Below are positions 8,992 to 18,400 of a DNA stretch of 64,000 nucleotides, in pieces. Source of the DNA: Anolis carolinensis (taxonomy: Eukaryota); NCBI RefSeq assembly GCF_035594765.1, contig NC_085842.1, positions 276,009,749-276,073,748 of the forward strand, written 5' to 3'. The position numbers and the translations under genes were made by a program. Below the pieces are notes generated by a model, which was given only the letters and a program-made list of their open reading frames with translations, was not told the DNA's origin and did not search any database. Position 1 is the first letter of the stretch; every line of letters begins with the position of its first letter.

Positions 8992-9698
8992 TGTTCTGTC
9001 ACGCGCTGGGCCTGTGACTGACTGTCTGTTATGTAGGACATATGCTTTACGCCCAGCGGGAAGCCAGGGGCCTAAAAGAAGGGTCGTTGAGGAGTTTTCC
9101 TGAAAAGATGGCCTTGAAGTCTTTAAAGAAATAACAAAGTCTTTATTGACGAACAAATAATAAATCTTCAAGGAGTCTTGTCCCACAGGACAGGCGATAG
9201 GCTTTGAATAACTGTGAAAACCCTCTTATAACCCCTCCCAGGCTATCTGTTATCTGGGCCTAGCTAGTCTGGGACCCACTGCCAACTCCAAGTGCGTCTG
9301 GTTGTTGAGTGGACCTACCAGCCAATGGCTTGCAGATGTTTCTGTGCTGTTGTCGTATCCCTGGACAGTCAATATCCCTGGGGTTCTTTAACCTTGGTGC
9401 TCTTTATCCCCGGTGGTCTTTAACCCCGGTGGTCTTTATCCCTGGAGGTCTTTAACCCTGGAGGTCTTTATCCCTGGTATTCTTGAAATAGGAAGCCTTT
9501 TACGGGACGAGTTGGTTTATGTCCTACAGCTGAGCTTCCTAAGAGAGACTAACTTAAAAATGGCTCCTTCCCTCCCAGAGCCCTGAACAGGGGGCAGAAC
9601 CAAACTTAATGGTGACAGACAGGTGGCCTGTCCTATGGCTGCAAACATTTGCAGCAAGAAAGTAAAATAGAAGGTTCTGGTACAGCTGTACCAGCACA
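8992..9698 (-). repeat. 3' LTR of BEL/Pao element
   Basis: Direct repeat of 14729-15435 with three substitutions seen by eye; preceded on the minus strand by purine-rich AGGCCAGGAG (PPT position). Confidence 0.96.
9374..9485. repeat. 16-bp tandem repeat x7 inside BEL LTR (second copy 15111-15222)
   Basis: Units a(t/a)ccc(c/t)gg(t/a)ggtcttt, alternating AT/AA starts. Confidence 0.9.
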
Positions 9699-9771: not shown

Positions 9772-10326
9772 TTATACGTTCAACAACAACACAATATCAC
9801 AAATTGGTCTGTGTAAAACAGAAACATTGCCATTTTGGCACACTCTTAGTTTTACCTTCCTTACCAATCCGTCCGGACTTGGCAAGGTCTCTACAACTCT
9901 GGCCAAAGGCCACTTGAAACGAGGTAAGGATTTGTCTTTGAGAAGTACAATGTCTCCAACTTGGATGTTGGGTTTAGAGTCTTTCCATTTCCTGCGACTC
10001 TGAAGTTGAGCCAGATACTCTGCCTTCCAGCGTCTCCAGAACTGATTGGCAAGAGTTTGAGTTTGTTTCCAGAGTGCTTTGTGAGATCCTTCGGGGACAG
10101 GATACATTATCTCCTGCCATTCAGATGTCTTTTGAGTTAAAATGGATGCAGGAGTGAGAAGCTGTGGGTTGTCCGAATCTGTGGTGATGGGCACCAATGG
10201 ACGGCTATTTACAATGGCTGTCACTTCTGCCATCAAGGTGACCAAAACATCATGGGTCAAATTTTTACACTTTAAAAACATAGCATTTAAAATTTTTCTA
10301 CATACACCAATCATACGTTCCCACAC
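9772..10326 (-). pseudogene. BEL/Pao integrase C-terminal part, out of frame with the upstream ORF at a G13 run
   Basis: WERMIG, IVNSRPL, LTPASILT, FWRRWKAEYL..LQ.RRKW, WPLARV, DGLVRKV, RPI motifs; C run at 10326-10338. Confidence 0.9.
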
Positions 10327-13300
10327 CCCCCCCCCCCCATGTGAGACGCATGCGGTACATTAAACAGCCATGTAACCTTTTCTGAACTCAAATAACGGTT
10401 GACACTGTGGTCCTTGGCAAACTTAAAAACACAGTCTAACTCTTTGGTAGCCCCAACAAAATTTGTGCTGCAATTGGACCTGATTGTAATACCAATATGG
10501 GTAAAAGGAGGGTCAATCTGGGTTCTATCTGGGGGTAACTCTGACATGAGTTGGCTTTGGCAACTGGCTCTTAGCCTCTTGCATGTAACACATTTGTAAA
10601 TAACACTACTGACCAGCCTTCTAGCATTGACTAGCCAGAAACCTTGATTTCTCAGTGCCCCTTCTGTAAGGGCCCTGCCCTGATGCTGCACCTTGCTGTG
10701 AGCATAACGAACCAGCAAAGTGGCTAAATGGCCTTTAGGGATGATGATGGGGTTTTTGATGTAGTCCGAAAGCTTAGATCTATTTAATCTCCCACCCACT
10801 CTAAGGACTCCCTGAGAGTCTAGAAAGGGGTTCAACAACTTAATACAGCTGTCTTCAGGGAGACTGGCTCCCCTTTGAAGGCAGTCGACCTCTTTTTTAA
10901 ATGTGTCCCTCTGTACAGACCTTAAAATCAAATTTTCAGCCTTTAAAAGGTCTAAGCCTTGGGGATTGCCTCCCTTCTTGTGCACAGCTAAATGGAAGAG
11001 TCTGGCCACCATGCCCTTCAGTGTGGGCCAGCTTGAAAAGCGTTCAAAAATTGATGGATTCAAAGTTCCAAACAGCTTGCTGGGCTCTAGAGATGTGGCT
11101 TTGCAGGACTGAACCTCAGGAAGATCCGGCTCCTCCGTAAATGAAAAAACCTTTGGAAAGTCGGGATTGGCTAGACACTCTGGTCCTGTCAGCCAGGTGG
11201 AACTTAAAGTCTTGTGTGCAGTAGCATCACGAATAGTGATATTTTCAGGGTTGTCATCGGTAGTTAACTCAGATGAAACTCCTTGGCAGCATACAGAGAT
11301 GTGGCTGAGGCAACTCTGCATGAGGGTGACTCTGCCACAGCTGAGAATGTTTGGCTGATCTGGACACAAAGAAGATGGAGGATGCATTCTGTTGACACAT
11401 ACAGGTCCCTGTATGGTCCATCCTAAAGGAGTCTTCTGTGCCAAGGGTGCACCAGGAGGACCTCTCTTTTCAGCCCGGATGCTCATCAGGCTTGGGCAGT
11501 TGGATCCAATGAGCAGGACGATGTCGATGCCCGGCTCAAAGGGAGGAATGAGGTCCTGTAGTCCTTTCAGGTGAGGATGCGCTTGCACCACTTCTCTGGT
11601 AGCAATCTGGTCCTTGTTTCGTGGGATGGACGCACACTCAATAAGGTCAGGTAACTCAAAACGAATGTCTTTGCCACATGGCGAAATGATAAATCCAGAT
11701 GCAACACGGCCCTGTCTTCTTTGTTTGCCCATACAAGTAGAAATACAATAGTCAATAGTCTTTGCCTGCCCTTTGAAGAAGCTGAAGAAGTCAGGGGTGG
11801 CCAGTGAACTGTCACTTTGGTTGTCAAGGGCCACGTACATTCTCTTCTTCATCCATGGCTTGCTGGCGGGATAGACATCTGCCAAACAGATGGGGTGGCA
11901 AATCCTAGTTTTCTTTGGGCTGCCGCACAGCTGGGTGCAAGCCACAGGGGGTGCCTCAGTGCCCAATGAAGGTCCAGCCGAATCTTCTGGATGCACTTCT
12001 GGGGTGCGTTGACTGGTTGCTCCGCTCTTGGCCTTGAGGGGCACAAAATCCTTATCATGCATCGCTGAGCAATGTCTGACGGATTGACATACCTCGCATT
12101 TTACCTCTTCTTTGCATGACTTTGATTGGTGAGGGGTAGCACCACAGCACCTGAAGCAGATCCTGGATTTCTTGAGGATCTCAACTTTGTCTGGGTGAGG
12201 CTTTTTGGCAAACTCTCTGCAGCCGGCCAAACTGTGGGGCTTTGCGTGCAGTGGGCACAAAACTTCTTTTGGTGTCATCTTGGCATCAGGTAGAGATGGG
12301 ATGGTCTCCGTAGTCTTGACGGCGATGTTTCTTTTGGTGTTACTGTCTTTAGCAGGTTTCTTGGTTTCTTTGATGGGCCTATCCGTCCTTGGAGCCCCAT
12401 AAAGAGTTGGAAATCCTGTCTGTGGGTCATTAAGTTGCATGGCAGCATTTGTAACAAAATCCACAAGATGGGTGAATGGTGGGTAGACCTGATGATTGGC
12501 CTGCTTGTATCTGAAGACTTCCCTGCCCCATTCTTCCTGCAAGAAAAAGGGCAGTCTTTGAGTGATGGCAGTTTGGGACAAGTGCTGGTCCAGGCAGGCA
12601 AACCCTGGAAGCTGTGGGTTTCCCTTAGCCGACTGGAGCTCAACCAATAAGTCTGATAGGTCCCAAAGCTGTTCAAAGTCCTTAGGTTTGAGCACCGGGA
12701 ACTTATGAAGTCTGTCCATCAGCGAGGCTTCAATTTGGGTGCTGGACCCATAACGCTGGTTAAGCCTCGTCCATGCAGTGTCCAGTGCTCTTTCTGGTTG
12801 GTCGATGAGGGCTGAGAAGATTCTTCTCACCTGGTGGGCTGATGTTGGACCAAGCCAGGCAACCATAAGAGTTAGTTCCTCCTCAGAGGTGAGTCTTAAA
12901 TTCTGTATGGCACGCTGAAAGGTCTTCTTCCAAAGTAGGAAATCTTCTGGCCTGTCAGAGAATTTCTCCACACCTTTGTCCCTCAAATCCTTCTTCGGGT
13001 TTCTAAACAGAGACTCAAGCTGTGACTGAGGAGTCTGAAGAAACGGAAGGGGTTTTTGGTCAGGGGTAAAGGTGAAGTTCTTCTCAAAACTAGAAGGTCC
13101 CTTCAGAGGAACATCTGTGATCTCAGGTATGGGCGAAACCCTGGTTTCTATTGGCCTCGCAACCTGAGTTGGTGGCTCTGGGCTCCTGGCCCTGGATTCT
13201 TCGACCTGCCTGCGTGGCACGATGACGCTGTCCACCTGCACCAGCTTGTTGTCTTGGAAGCCATCGTGGGCTGGCAGAAGAGGTGTGCTTGGTGGTGTCG

Positions 13301-14141
13301 GTAGGCGGTTGACGTTTTCCTGAGACAGCTCTCCTTGCAGCGCCTTCGCCAGGATGTTGGCACGAACCCTCTTCTGAGCTGCATCTTGTTGGACACGTGT
13401 GAGCTTTAACTTTGCTTCTAATTCAGTTTGAGCCTGCTCGAAGTTCAGGCTTAGCTCTGCTGCTGCTGCCTCAGCTTCCGCCTCGAGGATCTTCTCCTGT
13501 AGCTCCATGCGCTTGGCTTCCTTGTTGTAGAAGGCCGCCATCGATGAGGAGCTGCTCCTTGAAACAGAAGATCCTGGCGTGGAGTCATGTCTGCTGTTTG
13601 ACTTCCTGCTGAGGTAGCTGTGCTTGCTATGGGCAGAAGCACTTCCCTGACCGCTCTTAGCACTCAAGGCCTTCAGGGAATGCCTAAGGAGCTCAGAACT
13701 CACACTATGAGTGGGAGAAGCTTGATCATCCCTTTCCCTTCTGGGGGAGGGGCTAAAGTCAGCTACATGAAACAGGTGTGCATAACTTAGCTCCCTATGT
13801 TTAACACTATTTAGAAACTGTAGAGCTCTAAGATCTGCTTCCTGGTTGTTTATTTTGCTAAGCACCTGTGTGATGCCATCCACTAGGGCTCTCCATTTGT
13901 TAATCAGAACCTTGAGATTAGCCCTGATACATTGAGACTCCCTACTGTCTTTAGAACCTTCTAGTTGACCATCAAGGTTAACAATAGAAAGCCAGACGCT
14001 TTCAGCCTTATTTGTCAGCTGAGCCTCTTCTAGCAAAAGCAGGTCTAAAGCCTTTTGGGTAGGATGAATTGAACCCTGAGATCTCAAACTATAAGCTTTT
14101 CCCTCTGATTTTGCAGAGCCTAGAGTATGAGCCATAATCAC
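10311..14141 (-). CDS. BEL/Pao Gag-protease ORF fused in frame to the RNase H tail and integrase N-terminal part; RT absent (1276 aa)
   Basis: Triple Cys/His knuckles CPLH..HSLAGC, CFRCC..HQSKSC, CEVC..HCSAMH; protease YVALDNQSDSSL; LLIG...TPLGWTIQGP; WLTGPECL; integrase HHCC H.KVQH...CVTC; no YVDD-type RT motif. Confidence 0.92.
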   Translation of the reverse strand: MIMAHTLGSAKSEGKAYSLRSQGSIHPTQKALDLLLLEEAQLTNKAESVWLSIVNLDGQLEGSKDSRESQCIRANLKVLINKWRALVDGITQVLSKINNQEADLRALQFLNSVKHRELSYAHLFHVADFSPSPRRERDDQASPTHSVSSELLRHSLKALSAKSGQGSASAHSKHSYLSRKSNSRHDSTPGSSVSRSSSSSMAAFYNKEAKRMELQEKILEAEAEAAAAELSLNFEQAQTELEAKLKLTRVQQDAAQKRVRANILAKALQGELSQENVNRLPTPPSTPLLPAHDGFQDNKLVQVDSVIVPRRQVEESRARSPEPPTQVARPIETRVSPIPEITDVPLKGPSSFEKNFTFTPDQKPLPFLQTPQSQLESLFRNPKKDLRDKGVEKFSDRPEDFLLWKKTFQRAIQNLRLTSEEELTLMVAWLGPTSAHQVRRIFSALIDQPERALDTAWTRLNQRYGSSTQIEASLMDRLHKFPVLKPKDFEQLWDLSDLLVELQSAKGNPQLPGFACLDQHLSQTAITQRLPFFLQEEWGREVFRYKQANHQVYPPFTHLVDFVTNAAMQLNDPQTGFPTLYGAPRTDRPIKETKKPAKDSNTKRNIAVKTTETIPSLPDAKMTPKEVLCPLHAKPHSLAGCREFAKKPHPDKVEILKKSRICFRCCGATPHQSKSCKEEVKCEVCQSVRHCSAMHDKDFVPLKAKSGATSQRTPEVHPEDSAGPSLGTEAPPVACTQLCGSPKKTRICHPICLADVYPASKPWMKKRMYVALDNQSDSSLATPDFFSFFKGQAKTIDYCISTCMGKQRRQGRVASGFIISPCGKDIRFELPDLIECASIPRNKDQIATREVVQAHPHLKGLQDLIPPFEPGIDIVLLIGSNCPSLMSIRAEKRGPPGAPLAQKTPLGWTIQGPVCVNRMHPPSSLCPDQPNILSCGRVTLMQSCLSHISVCCQGVSSELTTDDNPENITIRDATAHKTLSSTWLTGPECLANPDFPKVFSFTEEPDLPEVQSCKATSLEPSKLFGTLNPSIFERFSSWPTLKGMVARLFHLAVHKKGGNPQGLDLLKAENLILRSVQRDTFKKEVDCLQRGASLPEDSCIKLLNPFLDSQGVLRVGGRLNRSKLSDYIKNPIIIPKGHLATLLVRYAHSKVQHQGRALTEGALRNQGFWLVNARRLVSSVIYKCVTCKRLRASCQSQLMSELPPDRTQIDPPFTHIGITIRSNCSTNFVGATKELDCVFKFAKDHSVNRYLSSEKVTWLFNVPHASHMGGGGCGNV

Positions 14142-14728
14142 AAATTAAGCAAACAAAATGGCAATGCAGTTACAAAAGCACACTCAAAACTTATTACTTT
14201 AAAGCAAGAAATAAGAACACAGCAATAAATCAGTTGCAAACAAACTCCTGCAAGCACCAAGGAGTTTGCAAAACCCCTTTTGCAGGCACCTGGTAGATGA
14301 AGTAGCAAGCACTGTGCAGACTTAGTCCTGATGCTACTGGAACAAAATGTTGCAATTTGCTGTGGAAAGCTTGCTTCTGCAGAGCGAATGTAGCAAATGC
14401 TGTGCAGGACTTGCTTCAAAAAGGGCGGGAAAGGCTTGCTTCTGTTGCTGGATCAAAATGTTGCAAACTGTTGTGGAAGGCTTGCTTTTGCAGAGGCTGC
14501 TGCAAATGTAGCAAACTTGGAAGAAAGGAGGAATGCACCGGCCCCTCCCTTCTGGTCACATGGGCTGTCTTCCAAGATGGCCGAAAATGCAGGAACACAT
14601 TCACATGGATAGCAGGTAATGGAGGCTTGGAATGGTCCTGAACTGGCTCCCTTATGCACTGTCTTTTAGCTTTTTCAAGTCCTTTACTTTACTCCCGGGT
14701 GGCAGAAGCCACCAGCTCCCTATTTCAA

Positions 14729-15435
14729 TGTTCTGTCACGTGCTGGGCCTGTGACTGACTGTCTGTTATGTAGGACATATGCTTTACGCCCAGCGGGAAG
14801 CCAGGGGCCTAAAAGAAGGGTCGTTGAGGAGTTTTCCTGAAAAGATGGCCTTGAAGTCTTTAAAGAAATAACAAAGTCTTTATTGACGAACAAATAATAA
14901 ATCTTCAAGGAGTCTTGTCCCACAGGACAGGCGATAGGCTTTGAATAACTGTGAAAACCCTCTTATAACCCCTCCCAGGCTATCTGTTATCTGGGCCTAG
15001 CTAGTCTGGGACCCACTGCCAACTCCAAGTGCGTCTGGTTGTTGAGTGGACCTACCAGCCAATGGCTTGCAGATGTTTCTGTGCTGTGGTCGTATCCCTG
15101 GACAGTCAATATCCCTGGGGTTCTTTAACCTTGGTGCTCTTTATCCCCGGTGGTCTTTAACCCTGGTGGTCTTTATCCCTGGAGGTCTTTAACCCTGGAG
15201 GTCTTTATCCCTGGTATTCTTGAAATAGGAAGCCTTTTACGGGACGAGTTGGTTTATGTCCTACAGCTGAGCTTCCTAAGAGAGACTAACTTAAAAATGG
15301 CTCCTTCCCTCCCAGAGCCCTGAACAGGGGGCAGAACCAAACTTAATGGTGACAGACAGGTGGCCTGTCCTATGGCTGCAAACATTTGCAGCAAGAAAGT
15401 AAAATAGAAGGTTCTGGTACAGCTGTACCAGCACA
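14729..15435 (-). repeat. 5' LTR of BEL/Pao element
   Basis: Near-identical to 8992-9698; minus-strand CATAAA (15253-15258), TATAA (14963-14967) and AATAAA (14879-14884). Confidence 0.96.
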
Positions 15436-18400
15436 AGACTCAACATCTAATGCAAGACACATGAAGCAATGCAACTGCTCCCAGAAATTCCAGCACTAAA
15501 AAGGAAAAGATCAAGTTCTCTAATAAATGTATGAACCCTGTCTGATTTTATATAGAAGTCATACAATATAAAAATATTATAGCACAATTTCACCACTTGA
15601 TAAATTTATTGGAAAATCCATTAGCACTAAAAAAAATCTTGCTACATCACTACATCAAACTAGTGGCAGAAAGCATCAGCTGCAGTTATTAATTTCTCTT
15701 TATTTGGTTCTTACATTGCAAAAGTATAGGCTTATTCATGAGACTTCAGAGAAAAAAACATTCTTCTATCCGTTCATGGAAAAAAACAAAGGGACTACTA
15801 AATAATTCATCACAGCCACCCACTTACCAGGATCTCTCTAACCTAAGGCACTAAATGCCCTTGCTTACTAACACCATAAATAACTGTTCACAACCCTCTA
15901 GAGAAGGTTAGGTGCATGTGTTCTCATATAGGGTGGGTATTACATTAAAAAAAACCAAATTACAGATAATTAGGCCTCCATATATGTTAATTATTCATTA
16001 ATACCTTTTTTGCTAGATCAGTTGATTCAGGCGAGCATCTTTTAAAAAAAAACATGCTCAGTCACAGTTCATACCAGCAACCTAATATGCACATATATGA
16101 ATATAATAGACTATATATTGTAGTAGATGAGATTTATATACTGTACAACGAATATTCTACTATAGGTTTTTGAAACAGTAATAAGAAATTGATGCTCCTT
16201 TTCAAAACCAATTTAAGATCACTTAACAAAACAAAAACAAAAAAAACAAGCCAGCTTCTATATTTTAAACATGAGTATACAAGATTTCTGAAAGCCACAA
16301 TGCTTCCTGTAGGATAAGAGGGAGTACTTGCCTTCCTCTGGGTAAAGGTAAGTTTGATATGCCAGCAGTGCCCATGCTCAAATATTACTATGGGCATTCT
16401 GTGCTTTGTAATTCCATTTGCTTGCTTTTCAGGTACTCGAGCTGGCTGCATGAATACTTCTCATGCTAGACAGAGGACTGGAATAATTATTTTTGACACT
16501 GCTAATCACTTACATGGAACATGAAGAGGGTTGGAGCAGACAAAATCAACCTTCACCTTCCAAAAATAGGCAAGTTCTCCCATTTAGATCCAGTTGACCT
16601 TACAAGTCCCTACAAAACCACCAAAGTGGGGGACTAACATCTGTTCTTTGCAACTCATTCCCACAAATATGGTGAGATATATTACAATAAAAGTAACTCT
16701 TTTTCATCCACTATAGAAATAATCTTGCATTCCACATTTATAAGACAGACATAGGTGGCAGGCCACAGTCCATCCTAACATGGGAGGAAACAGTCTCCTT
16801 TTCATAATCATGCAGTCATCAGTTACAAGTTTCCTCTAAATTTAAAAGGGTGAGGTAAGCTTTTGTGTACTTTAGCTTCATTTGTAAGATAATCTTCATT
16901 GGCTGAAAGCCAAAACCTTGCCTCAACTTTACTATTTAAGAAGCTTCTTTATTGTTTCCAACAATATTACAGAAGCTTGTTTCTGGAGCTAACCACAAAA
17001 CATGTTAATTTCTGAAAGTATATTCATTGTTCAGTCTCCATGGCATCAACAAAAACATCTTCAAGTAGTTGCTCATTAGTGATGCTCAGCACAATAATTC
17101 ATAAGAACAAATATTTGTATGCAGTTTAGATAAATCATTTTGTCTATTCAATTAAATGTCAGAAATTACCAATCTGTGTATTAATCTTTTCATTTCTAGA
17201 GTCATCTAAATTGTTCACAGCTCAGCGCACTGACATCACTCCCAGGACTGACAATGCTACTGACTTTTAAGTCAAGATATGTAGTATTTGACCTCAACTT
17301 CTAAAAACTGGAGCCTCGGGGTAAACTAATACCAGCACACCTGGGTTTTTTTCTGATCAAAGAAGCCTGGGGAAGAAATAGTTTTGAATAGAGAAATTGT
17401 GCAGGAGAATATATTTAACCCTTTTTCCCATGGTCAATTTTTGGTTCTAGACAGAACTGGCTGTTGTACATCGAGAGGTTTCCCCAAGATGTTTTGACCA
17501 CATTTCCTCTAGTTTGAAGCCATCAAATGTGAGAGAAAATACGGGGGTAGTTTTCTAGGCTGTATTACAAAGCAGTGTTTCTTTAAAAGGCATTGTTAGG
17601 TCTAAATTATACACACTTGTATGTTACATATAATTTATTTCTCAGGTTTGGTTTATATATGGAAAGATCTGATGCATCTCTCAGAAATGTAGTTTGCTCC
17701 TCACACAGTTTATATACTGAAAGAGTGGATGTATCTCTATGGAAAAATATTTGCTCATCTCTAGAGACTACCTAGGATCTACATGAACACAATTGTTCAA
17801 ATGGTTTTAATTCACTAGTTGTCAACAGAAGAATATCCAGATGTGCAGTGGTTTTTTTTTTCATAGTGAAAGGTTCTCTTCAGGGCTGGATTATCACTTC
17901 TACTATTGAAGTAAATGTGTCAGGGCTCTCAGTGACAATGCCACCCATCCTGCTGCTGGCACTACGCACATGCATATACAAGCTGTACAGAAATGTTCCT
18001 AGGAATAGAGAAGTAGGAGTATAGGCATCTCTTCCAACCCTTCCCAAAGAGTCCCCACCCTGGACGCATTTTCCATCTGCAGAGTAAATAAAGAGTGTGT
18101 TGGGGTCACTTCCTTGGCCATTCTGCCCTCCTCTTAACCTGGCAGCAATACCAACATGCCACAACATGAAGCTGCCACACCAACAGCAGAATTTGAGCAT
18201 TAGTCCAAAGGGGGTTCTAGCTTAGAAAGTGATCCAGGACCCGAACCACCTCAGTCTAGCCCCTTTTCACTTAATAAGAATTCTAGACAGGATTTTCCCT
18301 ATTTAACAAGCAGAGTGCTGTTTTAATTCCAATATTCTAAGAATTATTTCTGCAACTGCAGTTAGGTATAATGTTGCTTGATAACACAAACCTATCTACC

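What the first reader, a model, noticed from the sequence alone, without database searches (positions are those of the whole stretch)
14715..15258. Candidate self-priming BEL/Pao retrotransposon: PBS position pairs with its own LTR, not a tRNA
Seen: directly after the 5' LTR the element strand reads TTGAAATAGGGAGC (14728-14715), with no TGG start as expected for a tRNA 3' end. The LTR contains GCTTCCTATTTCAA on the same strand (15233-15220; also 9496-9483). As RNA these form 14 contiguous pairs (13 Watson-Crick, 1 G:U), and the 3' end of the LTR segment abuts the terminal CA exactly, which is primer geometry. A CATAAA box (15258-15253) starts 25 nt upstream of that segment, so it could be the transcript 5' end. 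A 6-bp hairpin GGTGGC-TTCT-GCCACC follows the PBS position. Established: Tf1-group Gypsy elements prime from their own 5'-terminal nucleotides. Inference: this BEL/Pao lineage may use an analogous mechanism, which I do not know to be described for BEL/Pao. Caveat: a second TATA-like box at 14963-14967 would instead place the segment in U3, implying 5'-3' pairing of the RNA or chance.
Basis: partly seen in the sequence, partly recalled or inferred. Interest (0 to 1): 0.85.

Follow-up and report, generated by a model that had tools for sequence, protein, structure and literature searches.

The report
Self-primed BEL/Pao retrotransposon in anole
A recently inserted, RT-less BEL/Pao retrotransposon of the green anole has no tRNA-type primer site; the 14 bases flush with its 5' LTR pair with a segment of its own LTR. 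Relatives from molluscs, fish and marine metagenomes show the same flush pairing with different sequences, so this branch of BEL/Pao most likely primes reverse transcription with its own RNA, against the textbook tRNA rule for the family.

Summary
TTGAAATAGGGAGC (14728-14715, minus strand) abuts the 5' LTR. It pairs with GCTTCCTATTTCAA in the LTR (15233-15220, also 9496-9483) as 13 Watson-Crick pairs plus one G:U, around a 10-nt perfect core (shuffle p about 0.001).

A second anole family with an unrelated LTR has a 14/14 flush match. Of 16 elements, 11 have a flush match at p<0.05 (Fisher 3e-13), each with a different sequence.

In the mollusc, fish and metagenome relatives the LTR segment follows an initiator-like YAG. 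In 8 of 13 it lies 13-31 nt upstream of the poly(A) signal, which is where R should start. That is the Tf1 geometry.

In the anole the segment lies 335 nt upstream of AATAAA, and also upstream of a canonical-looking CCAAT/TATA promoter. Whether it is the transcript 5' end here is unresolved, because no raw RNA reads were available.

The ICTV profile states tRNA priming for Belpaoviridae, and I found no paper describing self-priming in BEL/Pao.

This scan already found the same phenomenon on other DNA of this genome (s1-528321 and three further notes).

Verdict: real, and a new variant of a known mechanism.

The parts
14729..15435 (-). 5' LTR (707 bp, TG...CA)
   Evidence: Alignment of the two copies and blastn at 100% / 99.58%. 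TSD AGTCT at 15440-15436.
8992..9698 (-). 3' LTR. It is preceded by the purine tract AGGCCAGGAG (9708-9699) and followed by the TSD AGTCT (8991-8987).
   Evidence: Relatives end their PPT with GGGGAG directly before TG.
15220..15233 (-). LTR segment GCTTCCTATTTCAA, the proposed self-primer. The Watson-Crick core CCTATTTCAA is 15229-15220. An identical copy sits in the 3' LTR at 9496-9483.
   Evidence: No variant was reported in this segment among family copies in 4 sequencing runs.
14715..14728 (-). Primer-binding site TTGAAATAGGGAGC, flush with the LTR's terminal CA
   Evidence: Position 11 (14718) is G here and T in copy L001 and in the contigs of 3 of 4 runs.
14698..14713 (-). 6-bp GC-rich hairpin (GGTGGC-TTCT-GCCACC), one base after the PBS
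   Evidence: It forms in the MFE and centroid folds. The second anole family has a different-sequence hairpin (AGCGG-TTTTT-CCGCT) at the same place.
15253..15258 (-). CATAAA box, 24 nt upstream of the segment. Candidate TATA-like element, weakly supported.
   Evidence: It is CATAGA in most other copies (15254 T>C).
15110..15215 (-). 6.6 copies of a 16-nt tandem repeat, starting a few bases after the segment
14879..15063 (-). Canonical-looking promoter and poly(A) module: ATTGG/CCAAT at 15063-15059, TATAAG at 14967-14962, AATAAA at 14884-14879
   Evidence: Read from the sequence. No variants were reported in the TATA region among copies.
9772..14141 (-). Internal coding region. The 1276-aa ORF (14141-10311) carries Gag DUF1759, zinc knuckles, a Pao protease-like region and integrase H2C2, but no RT. 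A separate ORF (10326-9772) carries DUF5641.
   Evidence: The middle part (about 11265-10488) does not align with the sister copy L001.

Best explanation
The 14 nt flush with the 5' LTR are a primer-binding site for a piece of the element's own RNA, not for a tRNA.

Proposed steps:
- The LTR-encoded segment (15233-15220) folds back onto the PBS.
- A nuclease, by analogy with Tf1 the element-encoded RNase H, cuts just 3' of ...UUUCAA.
- The freed 3' OH is extended into U5, so the first base copied is the last base of the LTR.

The geometry most likely matches Tf1. The replicative RNA would begin at or a few bases upstream of the segment, giving this anole lineage an unusually long R of about 350 nt. 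This copy has no RT, so it must use proteins supplied in trans by related elements.

What is shown: the flush complementarity, its recurrence with different sequences across the clade, the absence of a tRNA-type PBS, and the R-start position of the segment in non-anole relatives.

What is inferred: the cleavage, the primer function, and the transcript start in the anole.

My odds: about 0.8 that the element's own RNA is the primer in some geometry, and about 0.55 for the full Tf1-like statement.
For: 1. Flush complement in the window:
- 10 Watson-Crick pairs, 14-15 with G:U, at shuffle p about 0.001.

2. Second anole family (L002, L003, L004, L007):
- The proteins share about 58% identity with this element and the LTR sequence is unrelated.
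- GTTTTGAGGATGAT pairs 14/14 at offset 0 with LTR positions 273-286.

3. Mollusc and Logan-contig relatives carry 8-nt flush pairs with compensating changes:
- Haliotis: CCTTTTAC / GTAAAAGG
- Crassostrea: CTTTTTAC / GTAAAAAG
- Pinctada: TCTTTTAC / GTAAAAGA
- Logan contig L010: CTTTTCAC / GTGAAAAG

4. Metagenome relatives show further distinct pairs of 7-15 nt in L022, L027, L029, L038, L040, L044 and L080.

5. Over 16 elements:
- 11 have p<0.05 at offset 0. Binomial 2e-11, Fisher 3e-13.
- Each PBS against other elements' LTRs gives a mean run of about 4-5.7.
- L022, L027 and L080 share the LTR end GGGAACGCGACA but differ in both PBS and segment.

6. In non-anole relatives the segment follows (Y)n-YAG. 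AATAAA or ATTAAA begins 13-31 nt downstream in 8 of 13 (p about 1e-10). That is the expected start of R.

7. No TGG occurs at offsets 0-5 in 16 of the 17 elements listed. The exception is L022, where it is part of the self-complement.

8. With an RNA starting at the segment, the MFE and centroid folds close on the segment-PBS helix, followed by the small hairpin, in both anole families.

9. Rfam finds nothing in the region.
Against: - In the anole the segment is 491 nt from the LTR end and 335 nt upstream of AATAAA. A conserved CCAAT + TATAAG module that would start transcription near 14940 lies downstream of it.
- The CATAAA box upstream of the segment is not conserved among copies.
- No RNA 5'-end data were available. 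All runs offered were Logan contigs, probably DNA.
- PBS position 11 is never the perfect complement (G or T against U). In the second family, positions 10-11 vary (AT, TC, TA, AC) in copies with near-identical LTRs. Simple re-copying of a 14-nt primer would not predict that.
- Anole tRNAs could not be compared.
- The catfish element has only 6 flush pairs, L070 pairs at offset 2, and two metagenome loci show none. Their repeat boundaries are doubtful.
Confidence: 0.55

Rival explanations
1. The element's RNA is still the partner, but the segment lies in U3. [quoted passage not shown] It would pair with the 5' PBS in cis, cyclising the genome, or in trans between co-packaged RNAs. It would then either supply the primer after cleavage or bring the two ends together for strand transfer.
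For: - A CCAAT (15063-15059), TATAAG (14967-14962) and AATAAA (14884-14879) module with classical spacing lies downstream of the segment.
- The 16-nt tandem repeats next to the segment look like U3 enhancer repeats.
- The TATA region is invariant among copies, while CATAAA is not.
- The second anole family also has a TATA-like TTTATAATC about 110 nt upstream of its AATAAA.
- From my own knowledge, not checked here: Ty3 is reported to use a bipartite PBS that bridges the 5' and 3' ends of its RNA.
Against: - In 8 of 13 non-anole relatives the homologous-function segment sits at the expected R start, not deep in U3.
- A primer with a multi-kb 5' tail would let plus-strand strong-stop synthesis run past the PBS complement (inference).
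- Cutting U3 of the same molecule would separate the 3' R from the template.
- The sharp 14-15 nt limit of complementarity fits a short primer.
Confidence: 0.25
2. The pairing is an RNA structural element for packaging, dimerisation, translation control or strand transfer. It is not the primer, and the real primer is something not recognised here.
For: Long-range 5'-leader helices are common in retroelement RNAs (general knowledge). The predicted fold closes a large domain.
Against: - A purely structural helix has no reason to begin exactly at the first base after the LTR in 13 of 16 elements.
- No alternative PBS is visible. There is no TGG near the LTR end and no Rfam hit.
Confidence: 0.08
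3. A host RNA primes synthesis, for example an internal tRNA fragment, a tRNA half or another small RNA ending in ...UAUUUCAA. The LTR copy would then be a coincidental or captured look-alike.
For: - Half-tRNA primers exist in Ty1/copia lineages (PMC6317226).
- Host tRNAs could not be screened here. No tRNA genes occur in the window or in 36 loci.
- Many PBSs in the clade share a GT(A/G)AAA start.
Against: - Two families in the same host have unrelated PBSs, each matching its own LTR over 14 nt.
- Thirteen different PBS/segment pairs co-vary.
- A host primer would not explain why the complement is always inside the element's own LTR.
Confidence: 0.05
4. Chance complementarity.
Against: Shuffle p about 0.001 for this element alone. 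Fisher combined p is 3e-13 across 16 elements.
Confidence: 0.01

Closest known systems
Tf1/Tf2 of Schizosaccharomyces pombe and the vertebrate/fungal Tf1/sushi group (Ty3/gypsy chromoviruses)
   Same: There is no tRNA PBS. A short stretch flush with the 5' LTR is complementary to a segment of the element's own LTR-derived RNA. [quoted passage not shown]
   Different: - A different superfamily. The proteins here are BEL/Pao (DUF1759, Pao_retrotransp, DUF5641), not chromovirus.
- Duplex length varies from 7 to 15 nt across the clade, against 11 nt in Tf1 (the Tf1 figure is from my own knowledge).
- In the anole the segment is about 300 nt upstream of the canonical promoter and PAS module, so the transcript-start requirement is unproven.
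Predicted self-priming in the plant Ty1/copia TAR lineage (Houba, Osr-1) and the Tcn1 clade
   Same: Self-priming is inferred from sequence alone, in lineages outside Tf1 proper (PMC6317226).
   Different: Those are plant or fungal Ty1/copia and Ty3/gypsy lineages. None is BEL/Pao.
Classical BEL/Pao (Belpaoviridae, genus Semotivirus) replication as summarised by ICTV
   Same: LTR-gag-pol organisation, a PPT before the 3' LTR, and the protein families.
   Different: [quoted passage not shown] This element and 16 relatives examined have no such site.
Tf2 alternative transcription start sites
   Same: An LTR can produce a replication-competent RNA that contains the self-primer, or a shorter RNA that lacks it, depending on TSS choice (PMC5341516). 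The anole LTR has two promoter-like arrangements, one on each side of the primer segment.
   Different: The anole has no TSS data. In Tf2 the short RNA starts downstream of the LTR, not at a second TATA box inside it.

Membership tests
Tf1-type self-priming (mechanism class) | No PBS complementary to a tRNA 3' end next to the 5' LTR | tested here: met
   The post-LTR sequence starts TTGAAATAGG. The first TGG is at +15, inside a hairpin stem. The host tRNA set itself could not be screened.
Tf1-type self-priming (mechanism class) | Sequence flush with the 5' LTR is complementary to a segment of the element's own LTR | tested here: met
   14 pairs at offset 0, with a 10-nt Watson-Crick core. Shuffle p about 0.001.
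Tf1-type self-priming (mechanism class) | The complementarity is maintained by compensating changes in relatives | tested here: met
   13 different PBS/segment pairs, and 11 of 16 elements at p<0.05 at offset 0.
Tf1-type self-priming (mechanism class) | The complementary segment is the 5' end of the transcript (start of R) | tested here: inconclusive
   Geometry fits in non-anole relatives: an Inr-like YAG, and a PAS 13-31 nt downstream in 8 of 13. In the anole the PAS is 335 nt away and a canonical promoter lies downstream. No RNA 5'-end data were available.
Tf1-type self-priming (mechanism class) | RNase H-dependent cleavage frees the primer 3' OH | not testable with these tools
   This needs biochemistry or cDNA-end mapping.
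Tf1/sushi family (Ty3/gypsy chromoviruses), phylogenetic membership | Gypsy-type Gag/Pol, usually with a chromodomain integrase | tested here: not met
   Pfam hits are the BEL/Pao families DUF1759 and DUF5641. The nearest proteins carry PF05380 Pao_retrotransp.
BEL/Pao (Belpaoviridae) | BEL/Pao protein families: Gag DUF1759, Pao protease/RT PF05380, integrase C-terminal DUF5641 | tested here: met
   DUF5641 at E=5e-30. DUF1759 at E=1.9e-5 (25.1 bits, against a curated cut-off of 25.4). PF05380 is absent from this RT-less copy but present in the 96%-identical anole protein P0001.
BEL/Pao (Belpaoviridae) | LTRs with TG...CA ends, a short TSD, and a PPT before the 3' LTR | tested here: met
   707-bp LTRs, TSD AGTCT, and the purine tract AGGCCAGGAG before the 3' LTR.
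BEL/Pao (Belpaoviridae) | 18-nt PBS complementary to host tRNA-Arg or tRNA-Gly (ICTV profile) | tested here: not met
   No TGG-initiated site at the LTR edge. ICTV statement in PMC8742986.

The most novel reading that the evidence does not exclude
A large and old clade of Belpaoviridae, spanning molluscs, fish and lizards, has replaced tRNA priming with Tf1-like self-priming. In anoles the primer segment sits about 300 nt upstream of a second, canonical core promoter in the same LTR. The choice of transcription start site would then decide whether an RNA carries the primer and can replicate, or is translation-only. That would be a built-in switch of the kind shown experimentally for Tf2.
Probability: 0.3. 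Interest if true: 0.8.

Novelty: new variant of a known kind. Interest (0 to 1): 0.68.

Why it matters
Self-priming has been demonstrated only for Tf1/Tf2 and inferred for a few Ty3/gypsy and Ty1/copia lineages. The ICTV profile of Belpaoviridae states tRNA priming.

Finding the same solution in a broad BEL/Pao clade would mean tRNA-independent priming arose, or was retained, in all three LTR-retrotransposon superfamilies. That bears on the old question of whether hairpin or self priming preceded tRNA priming (discussed in PMC3601003).

Practical consequences:
- LTR annotation pipelines that require a tRNA PBS will misjudge these elements.
- The flush LTR-PBS complement gives a sequence-only marker for the start of R in this clade.
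- The anole families are very young (LTRs 99.6-100% identical), so the mechanism is probably in use now and can be tested on natural RNA and cDNA.

Tried and rejected
- **RNA evidence for the TSS.** The look-up of sequencing runs offered only Logan contigs labelled 'RNA? (a guess)'. Laid on 14500-15500, they show many flanks beyond 15435 and variant branches, so they are probably DNA. No starts or ends were reported, which gives no TSS information.
- **Fold z-scores.** I compared sub-regions upstream of the segment, from the segment to the canonical TSS, and from the canonical TSS to the PBS, to see which part behaves as structured RNA. All fell between +0.4 and -1.9, which is uninformative.
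- **Host tRNA comparison.** There are no tRNA genes in the window or in 36 fetched loci. The supplement with tRNA 3' ends (PMC13524379) is not held.
- **Rfam on the LTR and leader.** No hit.
- **IMG/VR search with an anole-family alignment.** No relatives found.
- **Second weak look-alike of the primer's 3' end near the canonical TSS** (cacag|TTATTCAA at 14951-14941; CTAAAAC in the second family). These give only 5-6 flush pairs, within the chance range of the controls. Not claimed.
- **Shared k-mers between the two anole LTRs** (ACCAGGGATAA, AAGCCTATC). They are not collinear and are near chance expectation.
- **Two metagenome loci without a flush match** (L012, L021). Their repeats are tandem or far from the ORF, so the LTR ends are unreliable.
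- **L001 as an autonomous partner.** It is the same length as this element (6441 vs 6444 bp) and encodes only 1487 aa, so it is also a deletion derivative.

Full report
**What is there**

The window holds a 6,444-bp LTR retrotransposon on the minus strand, from 15435 to 8992.
- The two LTRs are 707 bp each, start with TG and end with CA, and differ at 3 positions (99.58% identity).
- The element is flanked by a 5-bp target-site duplication, AGTCT.
- The internal part has a 1,276-aa ORF with a BEL/Pao Gag domain (DUF1759), zinc knuckles, a Pao-protease-like stretch and an integrase zinc finger, but no reverse transcriptase.
- A separate ORF carries DUF5641 at E=5e-30.
- The nearest database protein (96% identity) is from Anolis carolinensis and carries PF05380 Pao_retrotransp.
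- That sister copy (L001) is the same length and is also deleted, so neither is autonomous.
- The scan's note s1-554217 on the same window already called this an RT-less BEL/Pao element. My results agree.

**Checking the observation**

Every coordinate in the finding is right.
- TTGAAATAGGGAGC (14728-14715) follows the LTR's terminal CA directly.
- GCTTCCTATTTCAA is at 15233-15220, and in the 3' LTR at 9496-9483.
- As RNA they give 13 Watson-Crick pairs and one G:U. One more G:U can be added.
- The perfectly Watson-Crick part flush with the LTR end is 10 nt.
- Only 1 of 1000 dinucleotide shuffles of the LTR reaches that. The same PBS against other elements' LTRs gives a mean of 5.0.
- The CATAAA box, the 6-bp hairpin after the PBS, and the second TATA-like box are all present.
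- Rfam finds nothing here, and the window contains no tRNA genes.

I fetched related elements through their proteins and through a metagenome scan with a clade alignment. LTR ends were defined from the repeat pairs, independently of any pairing.

Results within the anole:
- Copy L001, of the same family, keeps the LTR segment and the PBS except for position 11, which is T instead of G.
- A second anole family (L002, L003, L004, L007) has proteins about 58% identical to this one and an unrelated LTR sequence.
- Its post-LTR sequence GTTTTGAGGATGAT pairs 14/14 at offset 0 with LTR positions 273-286 in L002.
- A small GC hairpin of different sequence follows that PBS too.

Results outside the anole:
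- Mollusc and Logan-contig elements carry 8-nt flush pairs that differ by compensating changes:

| Element | LTR segment | PBS |
|---|---|---|
| Haliotis | CCTTTTAC | GTAAAAGG |
| Crassostrea | CTTTTTAC | GTAAAAAG |
| Pinctada | TCTTTTAC | GTAAAAGA |
| Logan contig L010 | CTTTTCAC | GTGAAAAG |

- Metagenome elements add further pairs: TTTTTCCAC, a 15-mer in L027, GTTTGAC, AGTTTTTAC, CGATGTTTTAC, TTCTCAC and GCGTGGT.
- L022, L027 and L080 share the same LTR end but differ in both partners.

Statistics over 16 elements:
- 11 have a flush run with shuffle p<0.05. Binomial 2e-11, Fisher combined 3e-13.
- Two of the five that fail have doubtful repeat boundaries.
- No element has a TGG at offsets 0-5, except one where the TGG is part of the self-complement.

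The complementarity is therefore real, selected, and anchored exactly where a primer's 3' end must sit.

**Where the segment sits in the LTR**

In the 13 non-anole elements:
- The segment is preceded by a pyrimidine run ending in YAG. This fits a metazoan initiator with the A as +1 (inference from the YYANWYY / TCAGT consensus, which is general knowledge).
- In 8 of 13, AATAAA or ATTAAA begins 13-31 nt downstream (p about 1e-10).
- The segment is 82-194 nt from the LTR end.
- That is where R should begin, so these elements have the Tf1 geometry: the first bases of the transcript pair with the PBS.

The anole families differ:
- The segment is 491 nt (this family) or 432 nt (second family) from the LTR end.
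- It is 335 or 292 nt upstream of the only AATAAA.
- In this element a canonical-looking module (ATTGG/CCAAT at 15063-15059, TATAAG at 14967-14962, AATAAA at 14884-14879) lies downstream of the segment.
- That TATA region is invariant among family copies.

Two readings remain:
- The replicative RNA starts at the segment and R is about 350 nt long.
- The segment is in U3 and acts from the 3' end of the RNA.

I could not decide between them.
- The only sequencing runs offered were Logan contigs, probably DNA, with no start or end information.
- Fold z-scores of the sub-regions were uninformative.
- Mechanistically, a short primer whose 5' end is near the start of the complement is easier to reconcile with plus-strand transfer than a multi-kb primer. 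This is inference. With the geometry of the relatives, it is why I put the Tf1-like reading first at about 0.55 and the U3 reading at about 0.25.
- A two-promoter arrangement has a precedent. In Tf2, start-site choice decides whether the RNA carries the self-primer (PMC5341516).

**An unexplained detail**

- PBS positions just beyond the 9-10 nt core are variable in very young copies, while the LTR segment is constant.
- In this family position 11 is G or T.
- In the second family positions 10-11 are AT, TC, TA or AC in L002, L003, L004 and L007, whose LTR pairs are 99.9-100% identical.
- Three more Watson-Crick pairs follow in both families.
- If a 14-nt primer were re-copied into the PBS each cycle, these positions should be homogenised.
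- One possibility is that the variable positions mark the 5' end of the working primer, where RT tends to add untemplated bases. This is my own speculation, drawing on general knowledge of RT behaviour at template ends. It was not tested.

**Comparison with what is known**

- The mechanism class is Tf1/Tf2 self-priming. It has been extended by prediction to the Tcn1 clade and to the Ty1/copia TAR lineage (PMC6317226).
- Phylogenetically this element is not a member of any of those. It is BEL/Pao.
- The ICTV profile of Belpaoviridae states an 18-nt PBS for tRNA-Arg or tRNA-Gly and tRNA-primed replication (PMC8742986).
- The main survey of BEL/Pao does not mention primers at all (PMC3118150).
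- Full-text searches combining self-priming with BEL/Pao terms returned no paper describing it. The searched library lacks most subscription journals, so an older description cannot be excluded.

**Earlier results of this scan**

- The scan has already met this phenomenon on other DNA of the same genome.
- Note s1-528321 carries a follow-up that reached the same conclusion, and three more first-reader notes describe similar elements.
- I treated those as leads and tested the claim independently on my own set of relatives. I did not examine the ticks and frogs they mention.
- This report adds a second anole family, the statistics, the R-start/initiator/PAS geometry in the invertebrate and fish members, the contrasting anole geometry with its downstream canonical promoter, and the PBS hypervariability.

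**Verdict**

- The element's own RNA as primer: about 0.8.
- Full Tf1-like geometry in the anole: about 0.55.
- It is a new variant of a known mechanism in a superfamily where it is not described.
- This particular copy is a non-autonomous, recently inserted member that keeps all the cis signals.

**Restrictions observed**

Noticed in passing
window 15110-15215 (and 9373-9477): 6.6 copies of a 16-nt tandem repeat (unit about CCAGGGATAAAGACCT) start a few bases after the primer-like segment. The repeat shares ATAAAGAC with the context of the real poly(A) signal at 14884-14877.
   Followed up: partly
L010 (Logan contig of SRR29525323), ends of the contig: This circular unitig (30-nt end overlap) is broken exactly at the base after its primer-like segment CTTTTCAC, which is the predicted cleavage site. 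It may be arbitrary.
   Followed up: no
L001:8660-8700 (3' LTR of the sister copy): The 3' LTR of L001 has a deletion of about 120 bp that removes the primer-like segment and part of the tandem repeats. Its 5' LTR is intact.
   Followed up: no
window 11265-10488 vs L001: The middle of the internal region does not align between this element and the 96%-identical sister copy, although both elements are about 6.44 kb. They carry different deletions or replacements of the RT region.
   Followed up: partly
3' LTR junctions of L002-L010 and window 9708-9699: The polypurine tract ends in GGGGAG directly before the LTR's TG in the anole second family and in the catfish, abalone and two oyster elements (GAGGAG in L010). 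In this element it reads AGGCCAGGAG.
   Followed up: no
window 14714-14692: The stretch beginning TGGTG and ending CCCGGGAG, which forms the hairpin after the PBS, loosely resembles a tRNA-Gly-type PBS interrupted by a short insertion. This rests on tRNA sequences recalled from memory and was not verified. The second anole family has no such resemblance.
   Followed up: no
L022, L027, L080 (metagenome loci): These three elements share the LTR terminus GGGAACGCGACA but have different PBSs and different LTR segments. They form a closely related set, suited to dating compensating changes.
   Followed up: partly
window 15300-15290 and L002 LTR positions 204-214: Both anole families have a CCATTTT(T)A(A)G motif about 60-70 nt upstream of the primer-like segment, in LTRs that otherwise do not align.
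   Followed up: no
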